DNA of 64,000 nt from Iphione sp. A-MEVVRFRX5 (lineage: Eukaryota): assembly GCA_976226885.1 (NCBI GenBank), contig OZ320315.1, positions 115,940,001-116,004,000 on the forward strand, read 5' to 3'. Position 1 is the stretch's first letter, and every line of letters begins with the position of its first letter. Under the pieces are notes generated by a model, which worked only from the letters and a program-made list of their open reading frames with translations, ran no database searches and was not told where the DNA came from. Below, in pieces: positions 2,646 to 60,300 of the stretch. The position numbers and the translations under genes are program-made.

Positions 2646-3303
2646 AGGGGCCTGCTGGTTCTGAGGTTGTTGTTCATCTTGGGGATCTCCGTCCTCGACG
2701 TCAGCCGGAGAGTGGGGGTGGAGGAGAGGGGCGGCGACGTCTTCATCCTCTGCACCGGTGGGAGAGGGGGGGAGATGTCCCCATCCTCTACGTCGGCGGG
2801 GGAGTGGGGGGGAGGGGAGGGAGGGGAACGTCTTCCTCCGTGTCGGAGGGGGGAGGGGGGAGGGAGGGGAATGTCCTCCTCCGTATCGGAGGGGGAATGG
2901 TGGGGGAGGGGAGGGAGGGGAACGTCCTCATCCTCTGTATCTGACAGTATGATTATTCGCATGTCCTCCTCCGTATCGGAATCCGATATGATCATAGGTA
3001 GTTGGGGGTGGTTCTCCACGGTGGGTTGTGGGGCTGTTTGGTTTGGTGGGGCAACCACTGGTAAAACATAGCGGTGGTCGTCCGGGGGGGTCTGCCGGTG
3101 GGCCGGGGGTGGTGGCGCGGGGGTCTGTGCTGGGGGGTGGTTGGCCGGGTTGGCCTCGGGTAGGGCTGGGGGCGAGGCTGGGGGCGGGGTTGGGGTTGAA
3201 CCCAAGCTACCGGAATGTTTTTGCTTGACCTCCGACGAAGGTCTACGGTGGGTTGTTCTGCGAAGGGTGGACGCGCCACCCTTGGTTGTCGATTCTTGGG
3301 CAT
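2570..3303 (-). pseudogene. Pro-rich/acidic accessory ORF with SIM-like motifs, frameshifted
   Basis: Overlapping ORFs 2992..3303 and 2570..3205; MIISDSDTEED, IIILSDTEDED, repeated SDTEED units. Confidence 0.45.
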
Positions 3304-3382
3304 GGGTGGCCTGCGAGAAGATGAGGGGATTGGTGGGAAAAGGGCAGAGACATCATGGGCAGAGGTGCTGGGTTGCGGGGAA

Positions 3383-4261
3383 CTAGGTGGTAGGAAGGTG
3401 GACGGATCCTGGGTTGATGTGCTGGGTTGTGGTGTGGAGGGACGGGCTTGGGTTTGGGACGCGGGCTGCTCCGGGGGGGGGTTGCTCCGTGTCTGCTGTG
3501 GTGTTGGGCTCTAACCAGGCTAGAAGTGTCAACAAGCTGTCCTCTACCTCCGAGTCGCTCATTGCGCACATGGAGGATTCCAGTGTAATGGGAGTGAAAG
3601 GGTTATAGGTTGGGCTGGTGGGGCGGGGAGACCGTAGTTCCATTGAGGGTGCGAGGTTGAGAGTGGGTGATGGTAGGGGGTTTGGGTGGTGTGTTGTATG
3701 GTTCATCACACAATTAGGGGCCTCTGACAGTGTGATGGGAGAGGGCAGGTTATAAGTTGCGGTGTTGAGGCAGGAGGACAGTTGCCTTGTGGTGGGTGGG
3801 GTGAGTGGCAGGGGGGTTGTTGGGTGGGGGAGGTTTGTGATTGCAGGGAGCTCCAGTGGCATGGGAGAAGAGGGGTTTGACGTGGACGTGCCTAGCTGGG
3901 GAGATGATGGGCACATGGGGGGTGGAGGGGTGGGGTTGGGTGGGGGTGGGAGTGGGTGGGCGGGGGCTGGAGGGGTGGGATCATCCAGTGGGAAGAAGGT
4001 GGAGGGGTCCGCCGTGGAGGTGCTCGGTTGGGGGGAGAATGGACGAGTGGGGGATGCTGTGATGGTCGTCGCGGCTGCGTGGGAGGGGCCGGCAGCGGCA
4101 GGTGTGGGACGAGTGCATCCCATCACCCTGTCGATGAGGGAGATCATGTCCCCCATCAATCCTGAGTAACTGGCACCCCGGCGAGTCAGGGTTGTTCTTA
4201 TTGCCCTCTCAACCTCCTGTACAATGGTGTTCACCGGGGTTGTTGATTTGTTGTTGGCCAT
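3383..4261 (-). CDS. Pro/Thr-rich 292 aa ORF of unknown function inside the LTR element
   Basis: Open ORF with helical-looking N-terminus (IVQEVERAIRTTL), colinear with neighbouring accessory genes. Confidence 0.4.
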   Translation of the reverse strand: MANNKSTTPVNTIVQEVERAIRTTLTRRGASYSGLMGDMISLIDRVMGCTRPTPAAAGPSHAAATTITASPTRPFSPQPSTSTADPSTFFPLDDPTPPAPAHPLPPPPNPTPPPPMCPSSPQLGTSTSNPSSPMPLELPAITNLPHPTTPLPLTPPTTRQLSSCLNTATYNLPSPITLSEAPNCVMNHTTHHPNPLPSPTLNLAPSMELRSPRPTSPTYNPFTPITLESSMCAMSDSEVEDSLLTLLAWLEPNTTADTEQPPPGAARVPNPSPSLHTTTQHINPGSVHLPTT

Positions 4262-36151: not shown

Positions 36152-37435
36152 TTAAGTATAAGGAAGTGACTTGACTAGGGTATCAGCGACATGCCTGCTA
36201 TTTGCAGACACTATATATTGCTGGTACGCATGCGATGACCACCCACCATAGTCCTGGACCTGGGTATGTGAGCACCCTTGAAGAACAGCATTAGTCGCTG
36301 CGGAGCGACGCAGGCTATGCAATGTGAATTTACAAGGATCAAGTCCAGCAACAGCAAGAGCAGCCCGGAACTGATGGGTCAGCCACTGAGTGGTGACTAT
36401 CTGACGTGACCTAGGCATTGTAAGGAGGGGTTGAGAGGCAGAAGTAGTAGGGACAGCTAAACACATATCATTAAATGCCTGCACAGGACACAATAGAGGG
36501 TCTAGACCCGATGGTAACATAATCACACGACTATGGTTATAACCTTGCATATTTTTAGACCATTTTTGCAAAATTTTCAGCTGGCCATTAACCACAGACA
36601 CATCACCCCTAGTCGGATGCCTTGTCGGATCGAAGGCTCGAACTACATTTGGTGCCACCTCCGATTGGCGGAGGGCAGCATAGTACATAATGAGAAAAGC
36701 AAATCGTAACACTGCACTACTTTGCATAGACTGCGTTATCTTAATAACATTCCTAAAATCATGCTGTGTTATTGGTGGACGTTGGACGGGCTGATGCGGC
36801 TTGGTCCGTCGAATGGCATCTCACATCAATGTAGTGGTCCTGGCCTCAAACGCTGAGACGTCTGCTCCTGCGTCAAGCAGAAACTGCTTGACTCCACCTA
36901 AGATGTTGAAGATGGTACCAGGAGAGGGGATGTAGTGATGGAGGTATGCAATGAAGGCTGCAGCATCCGTCAGAGATGGAGTCAACGGATTCAAGGTGAA
37001 GTGGTGGCAGAATGCGAGAAACAACCCTGCCGAGCTCCTTTTGTTGGACGTCGTCCCTGGCGCCCTCGCCTCAGCCAGCAAACGGTTGGCCCCTTGGATG
37101 AGCGCGCCCATCTGCGGATCTAAAACAGAGGAGGCAAAGAAACACACATAATCATGCACCAGACCACGGACGAGCCTCACACAGGCCAAGTCTCTTAACA
37201 TGATAAGATGTGACGGCAGCATGAGCGGGACTACTCGTGGCCCTTGACATCGCATCAGGCACCACCATATAGATGCCGGGAACATGACCGAAGCGGATGT
37301 TGACATGGCACGTTGCTTGGTGAAACCAAATGTCCCTCGCGGCAGCCAACAGCTCTGGGTCACGACCGCGGCCTGTCCTGAAGACAGCCACTGCTGCCTC
37401 ATTGTCACAACACAGTTCCACTGTCGACCCTGCAT
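36152..37435 (-). pseudogene. Ngaro tyrosine recombinase with one in-frame TGA
   Basis: LRQSEV, HSLRRSAAT, GGWSSHAYQQY; ORFs 36821..37435 and 36152..36727 share a frame; overlaps the RT ORF. Confidence 0.9.
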
Positions 37436-38852
37436 CTGCCGTAGTCACAAAAGTTTTGATGGCGAGAGCGGCGTTGTGTGCCTCTATCTGTGAAATATGC
37501 ATGGAGCTGAATTCATCAGGAATTTCACACGCATAATACGCACGGCCATCCGTTGCCCCGATGCCCTGGGGGCAAGCGTCAACCTTGACACATCTGTCCA
37601 CCACATCACTAGAGATGAGAGCCACCCCATTCCATGCCACCAGGTACTTGCGGAACCAGTCAAGATCTTGTTTCATACTCACATTGACCCGTAGGAACTG
37701 CCCTTTCATCTGACGTAACGCAGTCAAAATACGGCCCACAAACAGCCTCGCAGGTCGAACACATTTGGCCACATAGAGGAGCCGGCCAAGTAGGCTCTGG
37801 ATCATCTTCTTGGTAACGGCCTTCCTCTCGTACACCTTGTTGACCTCAGCCAATGCTTCATTCACCTTGGATTCTGGAATAGAGAGAGTCATGGCATGAA
37901 CATCAATCTCGACCCCAAGCCACGTGATGCGGGCAGCTGGTGGTTGAGTCTTCTCCAATGCCTCGGGGAGGCCAAGGTTTTTAAACAGATTCCTGGTTAT
38001 CCGAAAGGCCCGCCATGCTTCTTTAGCATTCGGAGCCACCACCACCAAATCATCCAAGTACGTTATTGCTGTGATATTATGTTGGGCCAGGATGTGGACT
38101 ATGGCCTCCGCTACCTTCTGCATATGGCAGGACGACACCCGGGCACCAAATGGCATTGATGTATCCAGGTAGATGCCGTCCTGCCAGCCAAACAGCAGCA
38201 GAGGCCAATCGAGAGGGCAGGACCTGAAGTTCTTATATGCCCTCTCGATGTCGATGGTAAACATACGAGTTTGTGGTCCCATGGCCTTAATGTGATCAGT
38301 AAGGGTGGTAATGGTGGGAAGGGTATGGTGCTGTGTCTCCCCAAGAATGGCATTTTTGCCTATATAGGCGTTGATAGAGAGGTCATGTGGGTAGGATAGG
38401 TCAGTGATGATTCTGCGGGCACTCGGGTCCTTCTTAGGCCTAGTCATTAAGGGTGATACATGCGCCCACTGAACAAACGGTGATGAGGTAAAGGGGCCAT
38501 ACACTGCGCTATGTGTGAGCTCTGCCTGGATGAATGACTCCACATGGGCTGGAAAGGATTGTGCAGATGGATGGTTGGCAATCCCCCTGGTGTCAGACAC
38601 AGGGCCCATGTACCCCATAGGGAAGCCAAACTCCAAAAAGTCGAGTAACCTGGCATATTTAGGGTCATATTGTAACCATCGTTTCCATTCAGGGATGTTA
38701 ATTGCAGATTTGAGTGGAATGCGGGCGCCTTGAGCATTAGGGCACCCAGTCTCTTTAACTCGGTTATAAATGTACGCAATGTCTGACTGCAGTTGGTAAT
38801 TATCAGGTTCAGGCCAGTTTTGCTTCCTATAGTTCACCAATACCTCATTCAA
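37152..38852 (-). CDS. Ngaro reverse transcriptase / RNase H
   Basis: RIITDLS, DIERAY, MPFGA, YLDD, WLG; RNase H VDAC, EAH, CDN, DAMSR. Confidence 0.93.
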   Translation of the reverse strand: MNEVLVNYRKQNWPEPDNYQLQSDIAYIYNRVKETGCPNAQGARIPLKSAINIPEWKRWLQYDPKYARLLDFLEFGFPMGYMGPVSDTRGIANHPSAQSFPAHVESFIQAELTHSAVYGPFTSSPFVQWAHVSPLMTRPKKDPSARRIITDLSYPHDLSINAYIGKNAILGETQHHTLPTITTLTDHIKAMGPQTRMFTIDIERAYKNFRSCPLDWPLLLFGWQDGIYLDTSMPFGARVSSCHMQKVAEAIVHILAQHNITAITYLDDLVVVAPNAKEAWRAFRITRNLFKNLGLPEALEKTQPPAARITWLGVEIDVHAMTLSIPESKVNEALAEVNKVYERKAVTKKMIQSLLGRLLYVAKCVRPARLFVGRILTALRQMKGQFLRVNVSMKQDLDWFRKYLVAWNGVALISSDVVDRCVKVDACPQGIGATDGRAYYACEIPDEFSSMHISQIEAHNAALAIKTFVTTADAGSTVELCCDNEAAVAVFRTGRGRDPELLAAARDIWFHQATCHVNIRFGHVPGIYMVVPDAMSRATSSPAHAAVTSYHVKRLGLCEARPWSGA

Positions 38853-38939: not shown

Positions 38940-40406
38940 CTACTGATGGTCCTCGACCCCAGCTACTCGTTTTTTGTGGCGTAGGATGGTGGCGTTGGAC
39001 CCCGCTGGTGCTGGTGGTAGTGATTTTGCTGCTGCCATTGAGGGGGCTGCTGCCTGCCTGCCAACCTGTTGTCCGAGATGGCTACCATGCGACTGCATCC
39101 TTGGTGGAGCCAACACCTTAGCCCTCTTGCCACATACACTAAGAGGATGAGAGTTCTTGGAAGCAGTCAATGCAAAGCAATAAGCACAAACATGAATAAA
39201 ACGAACACTGTCACCCATCATGTGGTCTGCCTTGAATTCACATGCTCCTGCACCATATGCCGGGCAGGGAACTTCGGTGATAGCTTGAGGGGCTCCAGGG
39301 GCCATGCTGAGACGCATCCGCTCATATTGTATTGTCTGTTGGTCATGCCATGACATCTCTCCCCGCTCAATGCCATCAAAGATGTAATTTGACCAATGCC
39401 TAACGGACTCCCACGTTCTATGTTGTGCATCCCGTGCAACCTCCTTAACATGTTGTAGGATATAGGGAAATTCATGCTGAGAGGTGGAATTAGCATCAGT
39501 AAGAAGGGCCAAAATTGCGGGCATGAACTCATAGTAGGACATGGTTTCCCTCGCCTGGTTTTTGTCCCTCATAGTTGAACAGCCTTTTCTATCAAGATAC
39601 ATGTGTGGCTTGGCAATAAGCTGGCGTATTCTAATGTCATGATTACCTTTTGCTTGACTTGAGGCGACCCACGGAGCAGCAGAGTCAAGGTAGCTATCAA
39701 TGTACGACTGGACTGCCGGCGTACGTCGCAGTTGGGCTGGTGGTGGGGGCACCGTCTGGGGCAAACCATAGGAGCTTGTAGGCTGAGAAACGTGGTGGTG
39801 GACTGTGGAGGCTTGTTGGTCAACAGAATGTGGTTGGACAGGAACTTGTGGTGTTGGTGATGGAATTGCTGGCGTCTGAATGCTTTGGGTTGCTGTGTGC
39901 ACCTGCTGTGGAGTATTGTGTGTCTGCTGAATAGCCGAAGACAAAGAAAGCACATGCTGTTTAAGTTCAGTGAGCTCACCCAAGACACCCTCAATGCGGT
40001 CCAGCCTTACTTGCACAGAGCCTGCTGAATTTCTACGGCGTCGTGGTTGCTGTTGTGAGTCTTGGTTGACGGAGTTCCCAGGTGCCGGGTCAGTAGGCTG
40101 TGACTGCTCGTTGTCGGCTGCCACGTGTTGCGACGGGACCGGTTCTCCCTGTTGCTGTAGGCCTGCATTGCTACTCTCTACGTCCCCGCTGTCATTGGTG
40201 GTTAACTCAGGGTTGGTATTCCTTGTAGAGCGCATGTTGGCGTTCTGGAAGAATAAATAAAATATAAATGAACGAATAAAAGATAGCCAGCAGTGTCGAC
40301 GTCTGGCTATGAGGTCCACCCTTTTCAACTGCGCTTGGTCAAGAGAGGCCGACTGACGTGTGTAGCCACTATTTATATCACAGGTTTGTGGCGCCCCCTC
40401 TCGCAA
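38940..40406 (-). CDS. Ngaro gag-like ORF1
   Basis: 488 aa ORF inside the repeats; C-terminal Cys/His cluster CPAYGAGAC...HVCAYC...HPLSVC. Confidence 0.8.
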   Translation of the reverse strand: MREGAPQTCDINSGYTRQSASLDQAQLKRVDLIARRRHCWLSFIRSFIFYLFFQNANMRSTRNTNPELTTNDSGDVESSNAGLQQQGEPVPSQHVAADNEQSQPTDPAPGNSVNQDSQQQPRRRRNSAGSVQVRLDRIEGVLGELTELKQHVLSLSSAIQQTHNTPQQVHTATQSIQTPAIPSPTPQVPVQPHSVDQQASTVHHHVSQPTSSYGLPQTVPPPPAQLRRTPAVQSYIDSYLDSAAPWVASSQAKGNHDIRIRQLIAKPHMYLDRKGCSTMRDKNQARETMSYYEFMPAILALLTDANSTSQHEFPYILQHVKEVARDAQHRTWESVRHWSNYIFDGIERGEMSWHDQQTIQYERMRLSMAPGAPQAITEVPCPAYGAGACEFKADHMMGDSVRFIHVCAYCFALTASKNSHPLSVCGKRAKVLAPPRMQSHGSHLGQQVGRQAAAPSMAAAKSLPPAPAGSNATILRHKKRVAGVEDHQ

Positions 40407-47610: not shown

Positions 47611-48715
47611 TAATAACATAATAATAATAATAATAATAATAATAATAGATTTTAATTCCAAGATGTCGCCCTGATTAGGGCATTGTTAACACTATGGAAT
47701 GTACATGAACAAAAAGTTGCATATTGTATACTCATTGTTTTCAGTATCTATGATGTTTAAAACATATGATTCGTGCATGTAGTCTAAATTCTTGCATAGA
47801 GATTGTCTCTCTATGTAATGGATCCATTTCATTCCAACATTTTGTGATACTATAATACAATCTGGGTAGGGGCACATAAACTTGTCTACCATCACCTTGT
47901 CTGGTAATTGTGTCATTATTCCTTAAAGGAATAATTCCTAAATTAACCAAATTATGAAATATTGTCAGACCAAAATATAACCTTCTGCAGTATGTACTCA
48001 TCATATTATATTTAATATAGAGATATTCAAAACGAGAACCTTTAATATTGTTATCACATACATTCTTATTCCTATAGTCTACTATTGATAATGCTCTACC
48101 TTGGAGTCATTGTAACCTCTTAAGATCTCTATCAGTGTTACATAGGAGAAACGCAGTAGAATAATCAACATGCGGTTGTATATAACATTTATAAAGTAAT
48201 AATATATCCTGGTATCTTAAATAAATTTTGATTCTGTTTAACACTGCTAATTTGCTTGTGACCTTCTGATGGATGTCTTCCAATTCTTTTTTGAATAGCA
48301 AGTCAGAATCAATCCAAACACCTAGGTATTTATATGATTCAACAATTTCAATATTCTCACTATCTATAGAGAAAATTACATCTTTAGATAGACTACCTTT
48401 GTTCACTATTAGTAATATCTTTGTTTTCTTTACATTTAAATTAATTTGTTACCCGTACACCAATTTTGTAGTTTTACAAAGACTAATTTAGCTCTTTCTA
48501 CTAAACGACCCAAACATGTATCAGATAAACAAATAAGAGTATCATCTGCATAGAGAGTTGTGTTTTCACCCAATGTTGCTGGTAGATCATTTATAAATAA
48601 CGAAAATAACAACGGTCCCAAGGTAGACCCTTGGGGTACCCCATGCAGTATGCTGGCAGTTTTTGACTTAATACCATTTACATAGCAATATTGCGTTCTG
48701 TTTGTTAGATAATTC
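47611..48715 (-). mobile_element. Older CR1/L2-like LINE, 3' half
   Basis: NYLTNRTQY, GVPQGSTLGP, YADD, YKYLG; GCCCT-N4-AGGGC hairpin and (TTA)n tail 47611..47646. Confidence 0.85.
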
Positions 48716-49497
48716 AGATTCAGATTCAGATTCAGATATTTTGATTGAGGTCTCCGCACATGTTTACAGAGTTTTCCACAACAATAGGTATTGGCTATGA
48801 AAAATGGGAATTAAGTGATGGATTATCTTAAATAGAGAAATTGATCATTTAAATAATAGTTACAGTGTTTGGTGAAACTAGAATTTGTATAGGTATTTGA
48901 TAAACATATGAAACAGATTATAATGTAATAACCAAACAAAGGTAACAAGACATTCGAATATTCATAAATGATCGCAGAGGCAAAGTACAATTTACGTCAA
49001 ATTTACACAATATACTTTCGCAGGATACATGATTACATACACCTAGTAATGAACGGCATGACATATAGAAAACAAATTATGTGCAACAAGAGCCACACTC
49101 CCACCACCATCTAACTCGATACAGCAATATGAAATACATACAAGGTAAATACAATTGGTAAGTAAACTGTTACAAAAAATAGCATGGAAAATAGAAGCAA
49201 TTGTCATGGATAAATTAATTCAATATTAAGTAACTGTACATGCATCGGAAAACAATGACTAGTAAACAATAGAGTTGCTCAGAGTTGTTATGCAAAGAGC
49301 TCTTCGCCTGACTTCAATCAAAAATTTACTGAGACATTTACATGGAAACCCTGGTTATACAAGCTCTAAATAAGGCCACAAACATGCCTGTAATTGTACA
49401 TGCCCTCATAGAGCGATACAACACATCTACCACTTCCTAGTTTTATACAGACGATCATAAGAATCACAAGAGAGAGTAGCCTGACTTTACCATGGGC

Positions 49498-51863
49498 TCA
49501 AGTGCACATACTGTCAGGTACCCTTTTGCTAAGCTTTACACTCAAGGGTAGGGCATTCCATTTTACAGTGCCTTTATAGCGAAGTGACTTAGCATACATT
49601 GCACCGGTTGGTTTGCTCACCACTCCACATAGAGTCTGTCCAAGCCTTGTCGTCGTCTTGGCTTTGGAGGGTATTTGCAATGGTTCACCATCTAAAGTTA
49701 GATCCAAATCAGCTCCTGCTGCTCTACCCACCTGCAGGTAGGAACACTTAGAGATACTCAGGACTAGTCCTGTTTTGTGACTCCATTCAGACACAGCACA
49801 GATTACCTGTGAACACCTATCTCGAAGGCAGAGCAGATCCCTAGCACCAATAGTAATTGACAGATCATCAGCATAGATGGTTGGTTTACAGAACTTTGGC
49901 AAATGCTGGACTATGTCATTGATGACCAAGATGAAAGCGTAAGGCCCAACGATTGAACCTTGAGGCACACCATGCTTTACAGGTTTAATCGACGAGACCT
50001 CACCCGACACTTTACTCTCTGGTACCTGTCACTGAGATAACTACTGAAAAAAACCCTTGTCTTAGGACCTACCCCAATTTTCGTTAGTTCAGATAATATT
50101 TTACCATGTGGGATTACGTCAAAGGCCTTTTTAAAATCAAACATTAATATTGTTGTATACAGCCCTTGATTGCAATATTCCTGAGCGTCACCTATGATTG
50201 TCATGATTGCAGTTTCAGTAGATCTTAAACCCCGGAAACCATGTTGTGCCATATGTAACAGTCCCTGTGACTCAATCCAACTCATCATCTTTCCCATCAT
50301 CCATGCTTCCAAAATCTTCCCTGGAAGTGGGAGGATGGTGATTGGACGGTAGTTTGCAATGTCCTCTTTGCTCCCTTTCTTGTAAACTGGTGTTACCCTC
50401 CCCTGCTTCCATGACATAGGGAATGAGCTAGCTAATATGCAATTGACAAACACCCAGGTTAAGAAGGCATGGATTCTAATTAGGACAGGTTTTAAGATTT
50501 TGGTAGGGACACCATCTATTCCAGAGGGTTTTGTTGTCTTTTGTTTCTTGATTAGATCCACTATCTCTCTTGGTTCTGGAATAGGAAGCTCAAACTGTTG
50601 ATCAGTCATACTATTGAGACATTCACGCTCTATTCTTGTGTCATCTACTAGCTTGTCAACCTCACTAATGAAAAAATTATTAAAGGAGTCGGCTAGTTCC
50701 TTATTCCCATTGATACTACTCCCTGCACTAGGTAAGATGTCCTTATTACCTGCTCTTCCCGTCGCCTCATTAAGCACCACCCATGTTCTTCTGGAATCCC
50801 CATGTGCATCACTGAGTCTACTCTGCCACCATACCCTCCTTTCTGATTTTAAGGCCTTCTTAACTTTCTTGTCAAGATACTTGTAAATTCTAAGGTCATC
50901 CAATGAACGGTACTTTCTCCATTTTTTGAAGAAATATTCCCTATCTTTATGTAGGCTATTTAACCCAGCACTAGGCTCAAAGTTGTTTCTATCCAGCCTC
51001 ACCTTTCTACTTTTCTCGGGGCAAGAGGATGCTAGTTCTTCTCTCAATTTAGCCTCAAATTCATCCCATCTCTGCACATGATCTCCTTCCATTATGCCAA
51101 CTCCATTACCTTCTAGGGTTTCACATAAGTCAGGCACATCTACCTTCCCCCATTCCCTGTAATTTTGGGTTTCAGACCTACAGAAGCCCCCACCCTTCTT
51201 TATTGTGACGAATATTGGGAGATGGTCACTCAGGTGCAGAGAACCTACTTCAGACCCCCTATGGTCATCAAAGTTCACCCATAGGTGATCAAGGCATCTC
51301 TCAGAGTCGATCATAGTGGAGTCTGTTACCAACTGCCTCATCCCTCTCCCATGTAGGTAGTTTGCAACCCCTAACCCCACTTTGCATGTATTTGAGAAAT
51401 GGTAATTGAAATCCCCCCCAACCACCCTGTCACTTCGTCTCAGATTGAAAAAGCCTTTCATAGCACGGTCAATAGCTGACACAGAGTCCGATGCCTTGTC
51501 ACCTGGGGGCCGGTAAACACAAAGCAGTTCGATTGGACGTCTCATTCCTGCCTTTAGTTTTATTCCTAAGATTTCTGTTGATGAGTCTGCAACTGTTAAT
51601 ACTCTACTGTCCAGCAAGGTGTAATGTGACCTATAATAAATAATGAGTCCTCCCCCCTTTTTGTTGCTAGTTGAGCACCTATCTGCCCTGACTGTACTGT
51701 ACCCTGGGATATAGACGCTGCTATCCAAGTGATTAGTTGATAGCCAACTCTCAGTTATCCCACAAATGTCAACACCCTCTTTATGGAGATAATCAGCTAG
51801 ACAGTTTTTCTTTTTAGCTATACTCCTTATGTTGTAGAACATTATCTTGGCACCAGGGGCCAT
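49498..51863 (-). pseudogene. LINE ORF2 (APE endonuclease + RT), frameshifted near 50000, thumb region deleted
   Basis: YNIRS, ITESW, SDHLP; NYRPI, DFKKAFD, GVPQGS, YADD; jumps from LDGEPL to the YKG..WNALP tail. Confidence 0.9.
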
Positions 51864-52974
51864 TTCGAAGATAATAGGGATAATAGGACTGAGGTAGTTG
51901 TCAAAAAGTCAGTATCACAGTTAGCAGTGAAAGTTTGGTAGATAATGACCAACCCTTAAATGAAACACATTGTAAGACAGTAGTTCAATACATAAGAGAT
52001 GAGATAAAGCATAGAAGACAATTATGGAAGAGAAAAATTTACACGGCTTCAATGACCATGGGATAAACTGACTAGTATGATACACAGATATATGTGAATC
52101 GCTGTATACAGACAAATCAGGAAGGTTTCAATATAACTAATAACTTGGATATGTACAGGTATTAGCAATCGTTGAGTGTTTACCAATTGCTAGAGAACCA
52201 CCACGCACTCATAAAGGTCGGATGAGTGTGAGAAAGAATACAAATACAGAAACACCGGGGCTATTTCATCCACAATGACTTAGTAGAGTTGGCAGACTCT
52301 GTGAGTAGTGGTATTGAGTTACAAACCCTAGTTCACCTACAACCTACTTGTACCAGACGGTACACAGATCTTACCAAAGATTCAAGTTAGTTATGTACAT
52401 AGATACTGGTTTTTAGTACACTATGTCAATATGTTGTATAGGTGCTCTCTGTCCGTGCTCCCCCGGCAACATCCAGCACCCAGGGTAGTAAAGGAAGAAA
52501 TCTTCCTGATTAAATCACAGAAAAGCTCTCATGAGCAAATCACAAAGAGTAAAGATATGTTTCTTAAACACAACTCTAGATGCCTCCTGACTGACTAGAT
52601 GCGTGTGTGGACCGTCAGTATTTTGCAACTAGAATATATACCAGTAACACATAGACAAACACAGGTCTCACCTAGGGTAGGGGCAGGATATTATAACATG
52701 ATACATAAGTAGATTATTAAATCGATAGTGTAATAGAAGAGATAAATAAAGAACCTGGTAAATATTCATTGCAAACACACCACCAATATTTGGCACTTAA
52801 CATAAGTATATTTGAGGTAACATACTAGGATACTATTGACTCTCAGGCAATCTAGCAAGATATGAACTTTAGTCCAGCCTTGTACTCAGACTGGTGCCAT
52901 GTTCATTGTGCTCACCCAACTGGCTGTTGGTGTATCTGTTGTTGCAGGCACAAAATACCCAGTCCAGGGACATC

Positions 52975-53664
52975 TTATGGCTGTGAATGGTGGAGATGTC
53001 CGAACTCCTGAATGTACTCTGATAGCAGCAGTTGCACCGCGAATGTCCACTCACCCACTACCACCGGTTTGGGGGTGTACCCATCACTGCCTAGTAGTGA
53101 AAAGTTGTTCACAATGTCCCCATCAATGTTTTTACTTACAGGAGTGGAGAATAGGCACGGGTGAAGTCCAATGGAGCATGCTGAGTCCTCGCAATACATA
53201 TTGCTAATGTAGACGGCCATGTCTAGTTTCAGCTGCTCGAGATCGTCGTCAATATCAGGCTCAAATCTCTGTAGGTCCACACTTGGTGACCCACAGAAGA
53301 TCAGATGTGGTTCGCCCTCGCCTGAACTGCAGCGCCTTGCAATTCTGGAGATACTCTTTTGGATCTTCTTCGCGTACTCAGCAGGAGTACCAGTTTGGAC
53401 GCACCACTGGCCAGTCTCCCATCGTAGCCAGTCGTGCGCACCAGCAGCAATTATCACCAGATGAAAACGACCGACGTCTCCATACGACAGCCAACGTGCG
53501 ATGCGCCTGTAACTACAGCGCTCAAGCATGATCAGGTAGATTTTCGTAGGTGGGAGGAGATGCAGGACTCCTTGCAGACCCTTAAACGCTGGGGCAGTTC
53601 GCTCATCCGCGATGATCAGTACATGTGTACGATGCGTGACTGACTCGTACGCTGGGTACTGCAT
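52975..53664 (-). CDS. SGNH/GDSL esterase-fold-like ORF, catalytic residues apparently altered
   Basis: VLIIADE (block I-like), VIIAAGAHDW (GxND-like), GSDGYTP (DGxHP-like); open 229 aa from the first ATG. Confidence 0.5.
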   Translation of the reverse strand: MQYPAYESVTHRTHVLIIADERTAPAFKGLQGVLHLLPPTKIYLIMLERCSYRRIARWLSYGDVGRFHLVIIAAGAHDWLRWETGQWCVQTGTPAEYAKKIQKSISRIARRCSSGEGEPHLIFCGSPSVDLQRFEPDIDDDLEQLKLDMAVYISNMYCEDSACSIGLHPCLFSTPVSKNIDGDIVNNFSLLGSDGYTPKPVVVGEWTFAVQLLLSEYIQEFGHLHHSQP

Positions 53665-53792
53665 CTTCGAAGCTGAAACACATCCAAATGTACATGGTTC
53701 TAGCAAGCATCATTACTCAGAAAGCATTAGCTGGATTGAGATGATACACGATCGATTGCATGATATAGTGTGTACAGCACTAGATCAGTAGT

Positions 53793-55679
53793 CTAACCTA
53801 CTAGTTCTTCTCTTATTGACATTAGGGCCTTTCCCAGAATGTTTTTTCCATCCACAACATTAGTCGACACAGTGTCACCATCAGGCAGGCTCGCAGTACC
53901 CGTTCCCAATTCTGGGTCACGATCCACGTATTTAATAGATCGCTTGCCAGTCGCGATCAGCGCAGCTTTAGCCTCCCTGTTGTTCCTTATAACGTGTCGC
54001 ATCACGTTTTCCATAATTACCTGTGAATTGCAGTCCCATTTTTCTCCTTTCTGCACTTTGCGATTCACTTTCCTTGCCTCATCCACCGATTCGCAGTTGT
54101 TTATTTCTCGCGCGAAATCAAAGTCTCGCTCCAAACGAGATCTTAGGTGGTGGAATGCGACTTCCGGCGATTCGTGTTGTTTACCTTCGAGGATTAAGGG
54201 GGGGAGGCATGCTGGTGATAATAAGTTGTGGTCCCTGTCAAAGCAAAACTCTTTATCAGTTTCGACATAGTTTAGACCATTGGTACGCAGATTTTCCGGC
54301 AAGTATGCAGTATCTTTTGGGGTGTATTTCGTTCCATCTATGAACAAGTCGACGCCCCTGACACTCGCTTTACTGCCATGTGCACGGGCCTTGTAAGCTA
54401 GTCTGCGCTGTTTTCGGTTTATGTCAGTGGCACTGGGAGGTAAGTCTTCCCTGATGAAGATACATTTTAGCTCCTGCTTTGTATTGAGTTTGCCTTTGTT
54501 TTTCAGAATTAGGTTCCTACCCTCTATTGAGTCCAGTAAAACCACCACTCGAATCTTGCTTCTCTGTTCACCTAGAATGTTGTAGTCGACAACTTCAGCA
54601 GGCCTAATGTTCGCCACCATCTTCACTATATGTCGAATCCTTTCACCTAATTTGTTTCTGTGTTTCGCATCTATCCCATCAATAACAACTCTCCGACAGC
54701 GATCTTTCACCTCAATTCTCGTCAAGTCTAGTTTGAGAGTATTGCACTTGTCTCCAATTGCTCTTAAGTGCTCATCCATCTTTATCAATTGTGATTCAAT
54801 TTCAGAGCGCAACTTTGTCGTATGCCTTTGCTCTAATGTTTTCCTTTCCTCCGCTAGTTTCACAATGCTCTCTTTGACACCTGTTAAGTCTGTCCTTATA
54901 GCAGATAATTCACCGTCAACACGCTCCTTGAAAAGAGTGATATCCTTTTCTAGGCTGCTCATAGAGTTAAATATCACATTGTTCATTCCAGAGCACTCGG
55001 TGTCATCCCCAGGGATGTCATTACTTGGAGTTTGATCAGGCGTGCCCTTCGAACCTACGTCCTGGATCACAGGTAAGGACGTGTCCGATCTGGTGACACC
55101 AACCGTCACATCCGATTTTGTTGCATTCCCATTCGTACAAACTGTGTTCTCATCATCATGTTCGACCAGATACCTATCCTGACCTTCATCCTGATCATCA
55201 ATAGATAAGACACAGTCCACAGGATTCTTTGGTATAGCCCCTTGTCCAATGCTGTCACACACTGACACCGACTCCAGGGAACCAGCCATGTCATGTTTAT
55301 GCTGTACGACTTGTGAACCGCTCCCTATTTGCTGGTCCTGTGTGCTGTTCTGTGCAGCAGCAATACTTTCATTAGGACTGTTATTACTGATCCGGTCTGT
55401 CTTGTCTTGAGTAGCCCAAACAATCTCACCTTTGGTCAGCTTCTTGACGATGACCGTTGGTCGCAGATACAGCGGCAACATTTCCCTATTGTCGCCCGTC
55501 AGTTTGAAAATCATATTTGGATCGATCGCATTGCCATTCCCATTGCAGATCCGGTCACCTACGATTCTTGTTGGCAATCTCGGTAGGATGTTTGCCTTGT
55601 ATGCATTCTTTTTGTGAGCTTTAGTTCCCATGTTTACCCACTGAAACTCGATGTCGCCGGGAGAGCACTGGAGCCACAT
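53793..55679 (-). CDS. LINE ORF1: coiled coil + RRM/CTD-like region + C-terminal NADAR (YbiA/DUF1768)-like domain
   Basis: Heptads then RRVVIDGI...IFIREDLPP; C-terminus ESPEVAF...EKW...ALIATGKRSI...DPELGTG...GKNILGKALMSIREEL; likely start at ATG 55631. Confidence 0.8.
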   Translation of the reverse strand: MWLQCSPGDIEFQWVNMGTKAHKKNAYKANILPRLPTRIVGDRICNGNGNAIDPNMIFKLTGDNREMLPLYLRPTVIVKKLTKGEIVWATQDKTDRISNNSPNESIAAAQNSTQDQQIGSGSQVVQHKHDMAGSLESVSVCDSIGQGAIPKNPVDCVLSIDDQDEGQDRYLVEHDDENTVCTNGNATKSDVTVGVTRSDTSLPVIQDVGSKGTPDQTPSNDIPGDDTECSGMNNVIFNSMSSLEKDITLFKERVDGELSAIRTDLTGVKESIVKLAEERKTLEQRHTTKLRSEIESQLIKMDEHLRAIGDKCNTLKLDLTRIEVKDRCRRVVIDGIDAKHRNKLGERIRHIVKMVANIRPAEVVDYNILGEQRSKIRVVVLLDSIEGRNLILKNKGKLNTKQELKCIFIREDLPPSATDINRKQRRLAYKARAHGSKASVRGVDLFIDGTKYTPKDTAYLPENLRTNGLNYVETDKEFCFDRDHNLLSPACLPPLILEGKQHESPEVAFHHLRSRLERDFDFAREINNCESVDEARKVNRKVQKGEKWDCNSQVIMENVMRHVIRNNREAKAALIATGKRSIKYVDRDPELGTGTASLPDGDTVSTNVVDGKNILGKALMSIREELVG

Positions 55680-55700
55680 CTACTCAGGCGCCATAACTGA

Positions 55701-56240
55701 AATTCGAGAACCATGCTGTAGAAGCTTCAGAGAAACCAAACTGTGATTTTAATTTAGTTATTAACAAAGAGTGATTTACAGTGTCAAAAGCCTTTTTTAA
55801 GTCTACAAAGATTACTATACTGTGTTTTTACTATTCAAAGCTGCATACAAATCATAAAGAACCTTATAGATAGCCTCTTTGGTTCCTCTGAACCTTCTGA
55901 TGCCGAACTGCTCTTTACATAGTAATTGATTGTTTTCCAGAAAAGTATATAACTGATTGAATATCAGTTTCTCTAGAACTTTAGTGGTTACAGGTAGAAG
56001 AGAAATAGGTCTGTAATTGTCAATCTTAGTTTTGTCACCAGCCTTAAATAAGGGTATCACCTTTGCACATTTGCACATTGTAGGAACCACTGCATGATGA
56101 ATTGAATAATTAAATAGATACAATAATTGGTTGTGACAGTTTGAAAAAATCATCTTAAAAATTCTAGTGGTAATTCCTTCAACATTGGAGGATTTGTCAT
56201 TAGCCAGTCTACAAAGGCTAGTGATAAGGTTAGTATGTCA
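55701..56240 (-). mobile_element. Older LINE, 5' RT part (continues at 48715)
   Basis: KVIPLFKAGD, NYRPISLLP, QFG, VDLKKAFDTVNH, AWFSN. Confidence 0.85.
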
Positions 56241-58120: not shown

Positions 58121-58369
58121 ACCTCCCTATCTAGTCCCAAGCTAGAAGAAGCACTATTATGATAGTAACCCAATCTTAACATGCTGGAGTCACATATTCC
58201 AAGTATTTCTTCTTCAAATTCCTAACGTAGTTGGGGGTACAAACACACCCTGTATACCATTCTCCATGCAGTTACATATTTATTAAATACCGTTCCTTTT
58301 TGATTTACAACTACGCAAATCCCATATTCTGACAACTGATAAAGAGTTATATGGAACATTAATGTTTGT

Positions 58370-60300
58370 TCTAATGGAGAGGTAAATAATAATGATAGTC
58401 AATATAATAGTCAGTGCAGAATGAATGCTATTCCATATCCAAATAAAAGGAGTTGCAATCTCATTGGCTCTGGTAGTTAGCCAAATTGGCCAATGTCTCA
58501 TGTCAAATTCATGTTTGAGTGTTAGCTCGCTTGTTTTTGCGATATCAAGGGCCACAGATTTTAAGTCTAATCCTGTGGTCTCTGGAAGTACTTGTGATAG
58601 ATTCAGGAGTGGAGACTCTGGCAGAGCTATGTTAAATAGGTAGGAGTTGTTGTAAGTGGAAGTTGCAGTATAGTCTGGGAGGGATAAATTGAAGTGAGCC
58701 GCTGCTGGAAGGTTAATTCCATGAAGTGGTACTTCTGCTTCTGACACACCAGAGGATGTAGTTGCTTCAACTTCATATGGTCCAACTGTCAGTGTACAGT
58801 TGCAAGGTAGCTTATAGGTGCATAATGAATAGTCTAAGTTAGTTTTAATATTACCACATGTAGTATAAACTAGATTAGGTCCCACAGAGATTAAGAATGT
58901 ATCATTTAGTGAGTGTACGGATGGAGGCATAGTTTTAGAGTGAACTGTAAAAATACACTTTTCAGTTGCTAAATCATTTCGATTAAAGAAAGTAGAACTG
59001 GCACAAGTGCTAAGGGTTTTCTTATTGGTGGATGGTAATTTCAAGTTTGTTGATCTGGGGCAATGGAAATATATACAGGCATATTTCTGTGTTCTGTATA
59101 TCCATATGATATAGGTGTAGCAAATGGTGTCCTGAATGTATGAATTCTGTAAAAGTCATGTATGTCAGTTGTCTTGCTAATAGGTACGGATACCTGCATA
59201 TATAAATAGCTGTCTGAGTACATGAACTTGGTGACTGAATGTTCATAATAGAAGGCTGGGTCCCGAACTAATATTTTATCATTACCTGTGAATAAATTCT
59301 GTACTTTACCAAGTCCATGCTTAACCTGATCTGGACTAACAAGAATACCAGGTTGTCAGCCAGCATGGAGATCATCTTTAATTCTGTGTAATGCAGCAAT
59401 TTTGAGAAACATTTTGTTAAGGTATACTTGTATATCTAGGCTAAAATCAATGGCTTGTGACTGGTTGGTCACTGCAAATATAAGTTGCTTATTTAGTTCA
59501 GTAGTACGTCTAGAAAGTGCTAATATGGCTGCATCATCTGATTACATCTGATTTGATAGTGCTGGTACTGCAATAGAGGATGAGTTAGCAGCAAGTGCAG
59601 ATACAGTTGACTCTCACCCTGCGACCAGCTGCCTTGGGAGACCATTTGCCTAAAGAGACCACTTTTGTTCAGTACCAGTTGATTCCCTCTATAATTATAA
59701 CCAATGCCTTAGGAGACCATCTGCCCTAGGCGACCACTTTCCTTAAGTCCCTCTGGTGGTCGCCTAAGGGGGGGGGCAACTGTAGTTGCATCTGTAAGCT
59801 ATGCAGAGCAGAGGGGTTGACTGATGCTGCCACTGTTTCTATTCTCCGTGCAAACATTCTGATGTCTTCCTGGGTAGTGGTACCAAATAGATATTTAGAG
59901 GCTTTACCTACAAAACCAAGCCACGATCTGGGTCTCCTACCCTAAGAATCTTTGATAGGTTTTGAAAGGAGTGCATTAAGATGCAAGTTTTCCTGTCCTA
60001 CTTTATGAAATAGTTTGGCACACATGTCATGGGTGTTATCGAGAAAAGATGTTAGTCGAAGACATGCGTCAGTATCCCTACAGGGAAGATTAACTCTAAG
60101 TGGAGAAAGACTATACTTGGAGGGAAAAGATTTGGGTCTGGGTGAGACGAATACTAGATCAACCTTCTTGCTGTTTGTCAGAAGTGGGGTAGGTAATTTT
60201 TTAAAATATACTCCTAAATTTTGCCTAAGGATAAAAGAGGACTGGGTAGGAGCAAAGAGTAAAAGAAGAATAAGAAGAATGATGCTCCTCTTATTGATCT
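58370..60300 (-). pseudogene. env: Second env subfamily, truncated after the first TM segment, interrupted by a MITE
   Basis: IILLILLLLFAPTQS signal; RRPR|SWLGFVGKASKYLFGTTTQED; DPAFYYEH; IWIWNSIHSALTIIL. Confidence 0.85.
59604..59782. mobile_element. Tc1/mariner/pogo-type MITE, 179 bp
   Basis: TA|CAGTTG...CAACTG|TA with imperfect longer TIRs and internal GACCA repeats; excision restores the env frame. Confidence 0.8.

What the first reader, a model, noticed from the sequence alone, without database searches (positions are those of the whole stretch)
53793..54250. NADAR/YbiA-like domain fused to LINE ORF1
Seen: the last ~150 aa read LLS...E.K.HESPEVAF...W...IM...L.ATG...DPELGTG...GKNILGKALMSIREEL. 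Established: this is the NADAR (YbiA/DUF1768) pattern; characterised members are N-glycosidases, including enzymes that remove ADP-ribose from DNA guanine. ORF1 domains I know of are RRM, CCHC, PHD, Tnp22-like and esterase, not NADAR. The E and D positions look retained, but SNF, KFxQN and the W of DxxWG are altered. Inference: the element may bind or reverse ADP-ribosylation of nucleic acid or protein as a counter-defence.
Basis: partly seen in the sequence, partly recalled or inferred. Interest (0 to 1): 0.85.

Follow-up and report, generated by a model that had tools for sequence, protein, structure and literature searches.

The report
NADAR domain on a LINE ORF1 protein
A LINE retrotransposon in this window carries a genuine NADAR-type domain (an enzyme family that removes ADP-ribose from DNA and RNA bases) at the end of its RNA-binding ORF1 protein. 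The fusion is widespread and was already noted in oyster LINEs, and this copy has lost key catalytic residues.

Summary
ORF 53793-55679 (-), 628 aa, ends in a NADAR domain: Pfam PF08719 E=6.8e-14, above threshold. An AlphaFold model (pLDDT 93) matches the NADAR structures 8BAU and 2B3W.

The ORF is the ORF1 of a 6,985-bp LINE (48716-55700, -) nested in an older LINE. Its order is ORF1 (heptad region, L1-type RRM-CTD, NADAR), a separate SGNH-esterase-like ORF, then a damaged APE-RT ORF2.

The fusion is not a one-off. 465 protein clusters share RRM-CTD plus NADAR, and seven loci from three assemblies place such an ORF1 directly upstream of an APE-RT ORF2.

It is not unprecedented either. A 2025 paper notes NADAR in the ORF1 of Crassostrea gigas Tx1 LINEs.

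Across the family the active site is nearly invariant. The window copy has replaced the YbiA-family glutamate (E125 to Y), W133 (to L), the SNF Asn and the KFxQN Lys. Its esterase ORF has also lost the catalytic Ser and His. ORF2 motifs are kept, and 1,669 codons are stop-free, so these changes predate the insertion.

Likely role in the family: an ORF1p-tethered remover of ADP-ribose from nucleic acids. This copy is probably impaired. That function is inferred, not shown.

The parts
48716..55700 (-). One LINE (non-LTR retrotransposon) copy of 6,985 bp, inserted into the RT gene of an older LINE
   Evidence: The host RT reading frame reads W-F-S-N | Y-L-T-N-R-T-Q across the insert once the insert and one GAATT are removed. 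Host RT pieces lie at about 55701-56195 and 48710 down to about 47750.
55701..55705 (-). Candidate target-site duplication GAATT, upstream copy. The downstream copy is at 48711-48715.
   Evidence: Read directly from the sequence. It is only 5 bp and overlaps the last tail repeat, so it cannot be told apart from priming microhomology.
55680..55700 (-). A 21-nt leader before the ORF1 ATG. The element may be 5'-truncated.
   Evidence: Sequence read. There is an in-frame TAG immediately before the ATG at 55679.
53793..55679 (-). ORF1, 628 aa, intact
54987..55679 (-). ORF1 aa 1-231: N-terminal region with no family match, rich in D/N/S/G, net charge -17 over aa 100-239
   Evidence: composition; no Pfam hit. 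Disorder is inferred.
54672..54986 (-). ORF1 aa 232-336: heptad-like segments, a putative coiled coil
   Evidence: A crude heptad script found 42-residue windows with 75% hydrophobic a/d positions. Pfam gives only weak coiled-coil hits. The position matches the coiled coil of L1-type ORF1p. Inferred, not shown.
54276..54692 (-). ORF1 aa 330-468: L1-type RRM, then a CTD-like helix plus beta unit, then a linker
   Evidence: The AF2 model has a beta-alpha-beta-beta-alpha-beta fold followed by a helix and three strands. The family profile hits human L1 ORF1p RRM-CTD: 2ldy 5.5e-5, 2yko 1.3e-4, 2w7a 0.002. Foldseek gives 2ldy and 2yko probability 0.98-1.0.
53796..54275 (-). ORF1 aa 469-628: NADAR (YbiA-like) domain. 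Kept: E506 (E43), R540 (R79), W548 (W89), D588 (D130). Replaced: K50 to R513, R93 to S552, E125 to Y584, W133 to L591, SNF Asn to P489, KFxQN Lys to V563.
   Evidence: Residue roles are taken from PMC11543638.
52975..53664 (-). Middle ORF, 229 aa from its first ATG (the frame is open from 53706): an SGNH/GDSL-fold esterase homolog. The catalytic Ser is Glu (ADE where relatives have GDS) and the catalytic His is Thr (DGYTP where relatives have DGxHP).
   Evidence: Alignment with the middle ORFs of L001, L003 and L006. AF2 model pLDDT 73, pTM 0.76. Foldseek returns 92 SGNH/GDSL hits with E<=1e-3 and probability 1.0. No Pfam hit for the window copy.
51864..52974 (-). 1.1-kb spacer between the esterase ORF and ORF2
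   Evidence: The relatives have spacers of 0.4-0.85 kb. Not analysed further.
49977..51863 (-). ORF2 part a, 628 aa: APE endonuclease (aa 8-218) and the N-terminal half of RT
   Evidence: Pfam Exo_endo_phos, Exo_endo_phos_2 and RVT_1. About 27% identical to ORF2 of NADAR-bearing LINEs.
49498..50010 (-). ORF2 part b, 170 aa, in another frame: the rest of RT including YADD. It then jumps to the C-terminal WNALP motif, so about 170 aa present in the relatives are missing.
   Evidence: Pfam RVT_1. tblastn and hmmalign against the relatives' ORF2 show a frame change near 50010 and uncovered conserved columns 790-972.
48714..48737 (-). 3' tail: four ATCTGA repeats, after a 3' UTR of about 0.76 kb (48738-49497)
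   Evidence: Sequence read.

Best explanation
Shown: the ORF is the ORF1 of a LINE whose lineage encodes an L1-type ORF1 protein (heptad region, RRM, CTD) with a YbiA-family NADAR domain appended. In part of the lineage a separate SGNH-esterase ORF follows, and then an APE-RT ORF2. The fusion is old and widespread, and the NADAR active site is under strong conservation across the lineage.

Inferred mechanism for the lineage: ORF1p binds the LINE RNA in cis and so holds the NADAR hydrolase on the ribonucleoprotein. There it removes ADP-ribose from nucleobases of the LINE RNA, the nascent cDNA or the nicked target DNA. Guanine is the best-documented NADAR substrate, on both DNA and RNA. This would undo a host (or toxin) ADP-ribosyltransferase mark that otherwise blocks reverse transcription or integration.

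For this particular element the domain still folds as NADAR, but it has lost the family-defining catalytic Glu and several ADP-ribose-contacting or motif residues. The neighbouring esterase ORF has lost its Ser and His. The ORFs are otherwise clean, so these changes were already present in the master copy. This sublineage therefore most likely carries a weakened or non-catalytic NADAR, with at most a binding or scaffold role. The copy itself is dead because ORF2 is damaged.
For: Identity:
- Pfam match above threshold.
- Profile against PDB: 8bau 5e-31, 2b3w 2.4e-25.
- AF2 pLDDT 93, with Foldseek TM 0.69-0.71 to 8bau and 2b3w.

ORF1 nature:
- L1 ORF1p RRM-CTD is hit by both profile and fold.
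- The whole unit is a single insertion bounded by the two halves of a split host RT, with a microsatellite tail.

Lineage:
- 465 clusters at 50% identity match with E<=1e-3. Most of the 150 best, which are the ones listed, align across RRM-CTD and NADAR together.
- A NADAR ORF1 sits directly upstream of an APE-RT ORF2 in L001, L002, L003, L005, L006, L007 and L009, from three assemblies.

Selection on the active site in 150 representatives:
- E43 is E in 142; W89 is W in 144; E125 is E in 138.
- The KFxQN Lys is K in 148; K50 is K in 103 and R in 30.

Window deviations: P489, V563, N566, Y584 and L591.

Domain-specific loss:
- ORF2 keeps 62 of 68 columns conserved at >=80%, NADAR keeps 14 of 21 (Fisher p=0.011).
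- At >=70% the counts are 80/94 against 18/30 (p=0.005).

Timing: 1,669 open codons with no stop, while 4.45% of point changes would create one. This bounds neutral decay at about 1.3% or less.

Biochemistry from the literature:
- NADARs hydrolyse guanine-ADPr on DNA (PMC11543638, PMC11125620) and on RNA (PMC11833690).
- Mutation of the E125-equivalent residue abolishes efficient activity. K-to-R keeps in vitro activity but fails in vivo.
Against: - No activity, substrate or host ADP-ribosyltransferase has been shown for any LINE NADAR.
- The host organism is unknown.
- No second copy of the window's own family could be found, so it is an argument, not an observation, that Y584 and the other changes are fixed in the family.
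- Phage NADARs work with His at the E125 position (PMC11543638, PMC11125620), so a non-Glu residue does not prove inactivity.
- The window keeps 10 of the 13 NADAR columns conserved at >=90%, and 16 of 150 family members score no better. It is in the low tail, not an absolute outlier.
- At the >=90% level the contrast with ORF2 is not significant (p=0.20).
Confidence: 0.55

Rival explanations
1. The window's NADAR is still an active hydrolase that uses a different catalytic arrangement or acts on a different substrate (another ADP-ribosylated base, or a small-molecule N-glycoside). On this view the substitutions reflect a change of specificity rather than a loss of function.
For: E506 (E43), R513 (K50 to R, which is active in vitro), R540, W548 and D588 are retained. 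The fold is predicted with high confidence. The ORF has stayed open. NADAR subfamilies already use Asp or His in place of the Glu. NADARs also reverse cytidine ADP-ribosylation (PMC12945103, title and abstract). Another LINE sublineage has Asn at E125 (P0110, P0119, P0123), and for P0110 the start of an APE ORF2 lies downstream.
Against: Tyr is not a known substitute at this position. Two pyrophosphate-contacting residues (R93, W133) and the near-invariant KFxQN Lys (148 of 150) are lost as well. The esterase next door has lost its nucleophile and its base in parallel, which looks more like general relaxation of the accessory enzymes.
Confidence: 0.2
2. The family's NADAR serves the element's own RNA or NAD housekeeping rather than counter-defence. 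Examples would be processing NAD- or ADP-ribose-derived groups on the RNA intermediate, or modulating ADP-ribose signalling at the integration nick.
For: The original comparative-genomics work linked NADAR to NAD+ metabolism and RNA processes (cited in PMC11543638). PMC12477816 suggests RNA-intermediate processing for the Ectocarpus and oyster elements. The domain is tethered to an RNA-binding ORF1p.
Against: NADARs tested so far do not remove phosphate-end RNA ADP-ribosylation (PMC11833690). The only nucleic-acid activities demonstrated are on ADP-ribosylated bases. NADAR domains also occur in other genetic parasites (a Gypsy lineage; an oyster nidovirus next to a macrodomain), a pattern typical of conflict genes.
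Confidence: 0.15
3. The NADAR segment is a chance resemblance, a captured host exon peculiar to this copy, or neutral pseudogene debris.
For: Single-sequence similarity to solved NADARs is weak (E=0.029 and 0.081). The first word-indexed homolog search came back empty. The copy is defective in ORF2.
Against: The Pfam match is above its curated cut-off. Strong profile and fold matches exist. The same domain order occurs in hundreds of clusters and in seven RT-linked loci. The ORF is intact with 0 of 20,000 shuffles staying open, and decay is bounded at about 1.3%.
Confidence: 0.03

Closest known systems
NADAR-bearing ORF1 proteins of Tx1 LINE families of Crassostrea gigas (Repbase), noted in Genome Biol 2025 26:320 (PMC12477816)
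   Same: A YbiA-family NADAR domain inside the ORF1 protein of an APE-type LINE. No function is known.
   Different: Those elements are classed as Tx1 (L1 superfamily). The clade of the window's element is unresolved. Its relatives' ORF2 lacks a C-terminal CCHC motif, ends in a WNxLP motif, and matches human L1 ORF2p only at 6e-9. The element also has a microsatellite tail and an esterase ORF. I could not compare sequences directly because Repbase is not available here.
Phytophthora nicotianae NADAR (PDB 8BAU) and E. coli YbiA (PDB 2B3W)
   Same: Same fold (TM about 0.7) and the same motif order. The E43, R79, W89 and D130 equivalents are present.
   Different: Those are free-standing enzymes with the full active site. 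The window's domain is the C-terminal module of a 628-aa RNA-binding protein, and it has E125 to Y, W133 to L, R93 to S and K50 to R.
Human LINE-1 ORF1p (PDB 2YKO, 2LDY): coiled coil, RRM, CTD
   Same: The RRM and the CTD-like unit are homologous at profile and fold level. A heptad region lies upstream. The gene sits 5' of ORF2.
   Different: There is no Pfam Transposase_22 hit. It has a long acidic N-terminus and an added NADAR domain. L1 has no esterase ORF.
SGNH esterase of non-LTR retrotransposon ORF1p (zebrafish ZfL2-1, PMC3905857)
   Same: An SGNH-fold module encoded 5' of ORF2 in a LINE. In relatives L001, L003 and L006 the GDS Ser and the DGxH His motifs are kept; the block III oxyanion motif (GxND) is more variable.
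   Different: Here it is a separate ORF following an RRM-type ORF1, whereas esterase-type ORF1ps are described as lacking RNA-binding domains. In the window copy the Ser and His are replaced.
NADAR domains in other genetic parasites: an Ectocarpus Gypsy Pol lineage (PMC12477816) and Pacific oyster nidovirus PONV1 ORF1ab (PMC12377751)
   Same: A NADAR domain carried by a replicating RNA or retro-element of a marine eukaryote.
   Different: Different host proteins (Pol polyprotein, replicase polyprotein) and probably independent acquisitions.

Membership tests
NADAR superfamily (Pfam PF08719 / DUF1768) | Profile match above the curated threshold | tested here: met
   52.9 bits against a cut-off of 35.1, E=6.8e-14. 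Family profile against 8bau gives 5e-31.
NADAR superfamily (Pfam PF08719 / DUF1768) | YbiA-like fold: a helical core flanked by small beta sheets | tested here: met
   AF2 pLDDT 93.2. Foldseek 8bau E=1e-8 with TM 0.69; 2b3w E=6.9e-7 with TM 0.71.
NADAR superfamily (Pfam PF08719 / DUF1768) | Catalytic Glu (E43 of PnNADAR, E88 of E. coli C7) and Lys (K50 / K95) | tested here: inconclusive
   The Glu is present (E506). The Lys is Arg (R513), a state seen in 30 of 150 family members. K95R is active in vitro but fails to rescue in vivo.
YbiA family within NADAR | Conserved Glu at the E125 position (Asp in BC4488 NADARs, His in phage NADARs) | tested here: not met
   The window has Y584. The family has E in 138 of 150. 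The definition is from PMC11543638.
YbiA family within NADAR | ADP-ribose pyrophosphate contacts R79, W89, R93, D130, W133 | tested here: inconclusive
   R540, W548 and D588 are kept. R93 is S552 and W133 is L591.
YbiA family within NADAR | N-glycosidase / ADP-ribosyl-hydrolase activity | not testable with these tools
   Needs a biochemical assay.
L1-type (coiled coil-RRM-CTD) ORF1p | RRM plus CTD homologous to L1 ORF1p | tested here: met
   Profile against 2ldy 5.5e-5, 2yko 1.3e-4, 2w7a 0.002. Foldseek probability 0.98-1.0. There is no Pfam Transposase_22 hit for the single sequence.
L1-type (coiled coil-RRM-CTD) ORF1p | Coiled coil N-terminal to the RRM | tested here: inconclusive
   Only a crude heptad count: aa 232-287 and 295-336 have 75% hydrophobic a/d positions. 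Over the whole segment it is not better than shuffles.
L1-type (coiled coil-RRM-CTD) ORF1p | Encoded 5' of an APE-RT ORF2 within one retrotransposon insertion | tested here: met
   The split host RT frame, the GAATT flanks and the microsatellite tail bound one unit of 6,985 bp. The same gene order occurs in seven related loci.
Tx1-clade LINEs with NADAR ORF1 (C. gigas, Repbase) | RT groups with the Tx1 / L1 superfamily | tested here: inconclusive
   No labelled reference RTs were available. A relative's ORF2 matches human L1 ORF2p only at 6e-9 and R2 at 1.8e-6. There is no C-terminal CCHC motif, and a WNxLP C-terminal motif is present.
SGNH esterase of non-LTR retrotransposons (applies to the middle ORF) | SGNH fold | tested here: met
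   Foldseek returns 92 hits with E<=1e-3 to GDSL/SGNH hydrolases, using a model of moderate confidence (pLDDT 73).
SGNH esterase of non-LTR retrotransposons (applies to the middle ORF) | Catalytic Ser (block I, GDS) and His (block V, DxxH) | tested here: not met
   The window has ADE and DGYTP. Relatives have GDS or DS and DGxH.

The most novel reading that the evidence does not exclude
[quoted passage not shown] On this reading, a large LINE lineage answers it by tethering a NADAR de-ADP-ribosylase to its RNA-binding ORF1 protein. Sublineages such as the one in this window have turned the NADAR, and the neighbouring esterase, into non-catalytic binders or decoys.
Probability: 0.2. Interest if true: 0.85.

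Novelty: new member of a known kind. Interest (0 to 1): 0.5.

Why it matters
NADAR enzymes are the only hydrolases known to reverse guanine ADP-ribosylation on DNA and RNA, and their role in animals is unknown (PMC11125620, PMC11833690). A large and diverse LINE lineage keeps a conserved NADAR active site on its RNA-packaging protein. This gives a concrete way to test whether nucleic-acid ADP-ribosylation restricts retroelements in eukaryotes.

The survey here goes beyond the one-sentence literature note in four ways:
- The ORF1p is of the L1 RRM-CTD type.
- The family comprises hundreds of clusters.
- Part of the lineage adds a separate SGNH esterase ORF. That combination does not fit the published ORF1p classes I read, though I did not check Repbase.
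- Sublineages with a degraded active site exist and could serve as natural controls.

The window copy itself is a dead element with an atypical, probably impaired domain.

Tried and rejected
- **Word-indexed homolog search with ORF1 aa 240-628:** empty. This was a sensitivity limit of the tool, since the exhaustive HMMER search later found 465 clusters.
- **Profile search with A2 to get taxon names:** 33 hits, none carrying an informative organism name; the only name given was 'ribA/ribD-fused uncharacterized protein'. Cluster look-ups also gave no names. The host taxa of the relatives remain unknown.
- **Close copies of the window's own family:** Viral contigs and metagenome contigs both returned nothing. 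So there is no within-family comparison and no dN/dS.
- **Second copy of ORF1 in the window:** none found by tblastn.
- **Rfam scan of the window:** no matches.
- **Literature search for the sample accessions:** nothing.
- **Clade assignment through the PDB:** uninformative.
- **P0119 and P0110 context look-ups:** the contigs were too short. Only L011 shows the first ~50 aa of an APE domain downstream.
- **First attempt to map family columns:** mis-registered because hmmalign --trim shifted the numbering. It was redone, and one search should be ignored.
- **First ORF2 alignment script:** timed out; rerun.
- **Rejected reading, neutral decay:** substitutions in the NADAR and esterase are not post-insertion decay, given the bound from open codons.
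- **Rejected reading, host gene:** the ORF lies inside a bounded insertion.
- **Rejected reading, separate elements:** ORF1 and ORF2 belong to one element, because the same three-ORF order recurs in L001, L003 and L006.
Full report

- Pfam NADAR (PF08719) matches aa 497-626 at E=6.8e-14 and 52.9 bits, above the curated cut-off of 35.1.
- The riboflavin-fusion NADAR model TIGR02464 gives E=3.7e-12 but stays below its own cut-off.
- Alone, the sequence is only weakly similar to solved NADARs: 2b3w E=0.029 and 8bau E=0.081.
- A profile of the sequence with 49 homologs hits 8bau at 5e-31 and 2b3w at 2.4e-25.
- An AlphaFold2 model of aa 329-628 built on that alignment is confident (pLDDT 93.2, pTM 0.81).
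- Foldseek places its C-terminal half on 8bau (E=1e-8, TM 0.69) and on YbiA (E=6.9e-7, TM 0.71).

The ORF is not a chance open frame, since 0 of 20,000 shuffles stay open. The window contains no N.

**2. What is it part of?**

Upstream of the ORF lies the first half of an RT gene of another LINE. Its reading frame stops at 55701 and resumes at 48710, reading W-F-S-N | Y-L-T-N-R-T-Q across the gap. The 6,985 bp in between (48716-55700, minus strand) are therefore one insertion. It is flanked by GAATT on both sides and ends in four ATCTGA repeats.

Inside the insertion, in order:
- a 21-nt leader;
- ORF1 (628 aa);
- after 128 nt, a 229-aa ORF (53664-52975);
- a 1.1-kb spacer;
- an APE-RT ORF2 in two frames (51863-49977 and 50010-49498).

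Compared with relatives, ORF2 has one frame change near 50010. It also lacks about 170 aa between the end of RT and the C-terminal WNALP motif. This copy is therefore not autonomous.

**3. Architecture of ORF1p**

- The N-terminal ~230 aa have no family match and are acidic.
- Residues ~232-336 contain heptad-like stretches. The evidence is a crude count, so a coiled coil is inferred only.
- Residues 330-468 fold as a beta-alpha-beta-beta-alpha-beta RRM followed by a helix and a small sheet.
- The family profile hits the RRM-CTD of human LINE-1 ORF1p (2ldy 5.5e-5, 2yko 1.3e-4, 2w7a 0.002). Foldseek agrees with probability 0.98-1.0.

ORF1p is thus an L1-type RNA-binding ORF1 protein with a NADAR domain added at its C-terminus.

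**4. Is the fusion a property of a family?**

No close copy of this family was found anywhere. The nearest ORF2 proteins are only about 27% identical. Even so:
- Three of the four best ORF2 hits have an upstream gene with a NADAR Pfam hit (L001, L002, L003). The fourth, L004, has none called.
- An exhaustive HMMER search with ORF1 aa 329-628 found 465 cluster representatives at E<=1e-3, 37 of them at <=1e-10. Most of the 150 best, which are the ones listed, align over both the RRM-CTD and the NADAR part.
- Of five such proteins looked up on contigs long enough to show their neighbours, four lie directly upstream of an APE-RT ORF2 (L005, L006, L007, L009).
- The fifth, L008, is a protein of five tandem NADAR units with no RT nearby.
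- Two further look-ups landed on contigs too short to tell. One of them, L011, shows the first ~50 aa of an APE domain downstream.

The seven linked loci come from three different assemblies.

**5. The middle ORF**

L001, L003 and L006 have a 209-262-aa ORF between ORF1 and ORF2. These three are homologous to each other (blastp 1e-15 to 1e-49) and carry the SGNH-hydrolase signature motifs: a GDS-type Ser motif and DGxH in all three, plus a GxN/GxxD-type block.
- The window's middle ORF is collinear with them (E about 4e-6).
- Its model (pLDDT 73, pTM 0.76) hits 92 GDSL/SGNH hydrolases with E<=1e-3.
- In the window copy the nucleophile Ser is Glu (ADE for GDS) and the His is Thr (DGYTP for DGxHP).

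SGNH esterases are known in LINE ORF1 proteins of the CR1, RTEX and Penelope groups. There they follow a coiled coil and are said to lack RNA-binding domains (PMC3905857). In this lineage the esterase is a separate ORF behind an RRM-type ORF1. The esterase ORF is absent from L002, L005, L007 and L009, so it is a variable module.

**6. State of the NADAR active site**

Residue roles come from the P. nicotianae NADAR-ADPr structure and from E. coli C7 NADAR mutagenesis (PMC11543638):
- E43 and E125 hold the distal ribose.
- K50, R79, W89, R93, W133 and D130 hold the pyrophosphate.
- E125 defines the YbiA family. Mutating its structural equivalent abolishes efficient hydrolysis.
- K-to-R keeps in vitro activity but not in vivo rescue.

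Using the profile alignment to 8bau and 150 family representatives:

| Position | Family (of 150) | Window |
|---|---|---|
| E43 | E 142 | E506 |
| K50 | K 103, R 30 | R513 |
| W89 | W 144 | W548 |
| D130 | D 101, N 31 | D588 |
| E125 | E 138 | Y584 |
| W133 | W, F or Y 148 | L591 |
| SNF Asn | N 134 | P489 |
| KFxQN Lys | K 148 | V563 |
| KFxQN Gln | Q 134 | N566 |

The lineage as a whole conserves a complete active site, which argues for a selected enzymatic function. The window protein sits in the low tail. It keeps 10 of the 13 columns conserved at >=90%, and 16 of 150 members score no better.

**7. Decay or lineage feature?**

The same copy keeps 62 of 68 ORF2 columns that are >=80% conserved among its ORF2 relatives, and the losses are mostly conservative. 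It keeps only 14 of 21 such columns in NADAR (Fisher one-sided p=0.011). At >=70% the counts are 80/94 against 18/30 (p=0.005). At >=90% the difference is not significant (p=0.20).

The four ORF pieces total 1,669 codons without a single stop, although 4.45% of point substitutions would create one. This bounds neutral divergence since insertion at roughly 1.3%. That is far too little to replace a dozen conserved NADAR residues and both esterase catalytic residues. Ser to Glu alone needs at least two nucleotide changes. The substitutions were therefore already present in the element that made this copy.

A second sublineage (P0110, P0119, P0123) has Asn at the E125 position. For P0110, the start of an APE ORF2 lies downstream.

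**8. How it most likely works**

Shown: the domain identity, the fusion to an L1-type ORF1p, the linkage to APE-RT, the family-wide conservation of the active site, and its partial loss in this copy.

Inferred: ORF1p binds its own RNA in cis and thereby concentrates NADAR on the LINE ribonucleoprotein. NADARs reverse guanine ADP-ribosylation on DNA (PMC11543638, PMC11125620) and on RNA (PMC11833690), and they also reverse cytidine ADP-ribosylation (PMC12945103). [quoted passage not shown] The simplest mechanism is therefore removal of base-linked ADP-ribose from LINE RNA, cDNA or target DNA. That would counter an ADP-ribosyltransferase that otherwise blocks reverse transcription.

Circumstantial support: NADAR also occurs in an Ectocarpus Gypsy lineage and in a Pacific oyster nidovirus, next to a macrodomain.

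For the window's sublineage I consider catalysis unlikely but not excluded, since phage NADARs use His at the E125 position. A binding or scaffold role is the default alternative. The rivals are listed with their evidence in the rival explanations.

**9. Comparison with what is known, and novelty**

NADAR in LINE ORF1 is not new as a category. PMC12477816 (2025) reports it for several Tx1 LINE families of Crassostrea gigas in Repbase, in one sentence and a supplementary figure, and suggests RNA processing.

Whether the window's element belongs to Tx1 could not be tested. Its relatives' ORF2 lacks a CCHC motif, ends in WNxLP, and is only remotely similar to human L1 ORF2p. With the microsatellite tail and the esterase, this points, from my own recollection of LINE clades, toward the CR1/Jockey-like group. 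That is a lead, not a result.

I file the finding as a new, divergent member of a known kind. The parts that go beyond the literature I read are:
- the size of the family;
- the L1-type RRM-CTD context;
- the three-ORF layout with a separate esterase;
- the existence of active-site-degraded sublineages.

**10. Limits**

- Host organism unknown.
- No sister copies of the window's family.
- No labelled RT references.
- No access to model coordinates to inspect the pocket.
- No biochemistry.

Noticed in passing
window 52975-53664 (-): A separate SGNH/GDSL-fold ORF lies between ORF1 and ORF2 of the LINE. Its catalytic Ser and His are replaced (ADE, DGYTP). Homologous ORFs that keep the Ser and His motifs sit in the same position in L001 (4883-5512), L003 (4786-5574) and L006 (8456-9115). 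An RRM-type ORF1 plus a separate esterase ORF does not fit the published ORF1p classes I read.
   Followed up: yes
window 49498-51863 (-): ORF2 of the element has a frame change near 50010. It also lacks about 170 aa between the RT and the C-terminal WNALP motif, compared with its relatives. YADD and the APE motifs are intact.
   Followed up: partly
window 55701-56195 and about 47750-48710 (-): An older LINE is split by the insertion inside its RT gene. Its RT is 37-42% identical to the same relatives' ORF2 over that stretch, so the target belongs to the same broad LINE group.
   Followed up: partly
L008 1734-4961: A 1,075-aa protein made of five tandem NADAR units, followed by an 81-aa NADAR fragment, with no RT in 12 kb. 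This is a different, unexplained NADAR architecture from a third-party assembly.
   Followed up: no
L005 684-3119 (P0096): In this 811-aa ORF1 the NADAR domain (aa 369-514) is not C-terminal. About 300 further residues with coiled-coil-like weak hits follow it.
   Followed up: no
P0110, P0119, P0123 (L010-L012): A sublineage of ORF1-NADAR proteins has Asn at the E125 position (motif LNCDT instead of xEAT). L011 shows the start of an APE ORF2 about 0.9 kb downstream.
   Followed up: partly
window 17228-19051 (+): Another LINE-type RT ORF (607 aa, RVT_1 E=2e-31), about 28-30% identical to the element's ORF2 over the aligned parts.
   Followed up: no
window 36152-38852 (-): An RT ORF (566 aa) is followed by an ORF with a tyrosine-recombinase (Phage_integrase) hit. 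This looks like a DIRS-type retroelement. A 488-aa ORF with no family match lies upstream at 38940-40406.
   Followed up: no
window 58283-59044 (-): A 253-aa ORF with a hydrophobic segment near its C-terminus and N-x-S/T sites. No Pfam hit; nature unknown.
   Followed up: no
window 2001-4000: A GC-rich stretch (62.6% GC against about 35-50% elsewhere) with several overlapping ORFs of 150-290 aa that have no Pfam hits. GC skew is strongly positive over roughly the first 26 kb.
   Followed up: no
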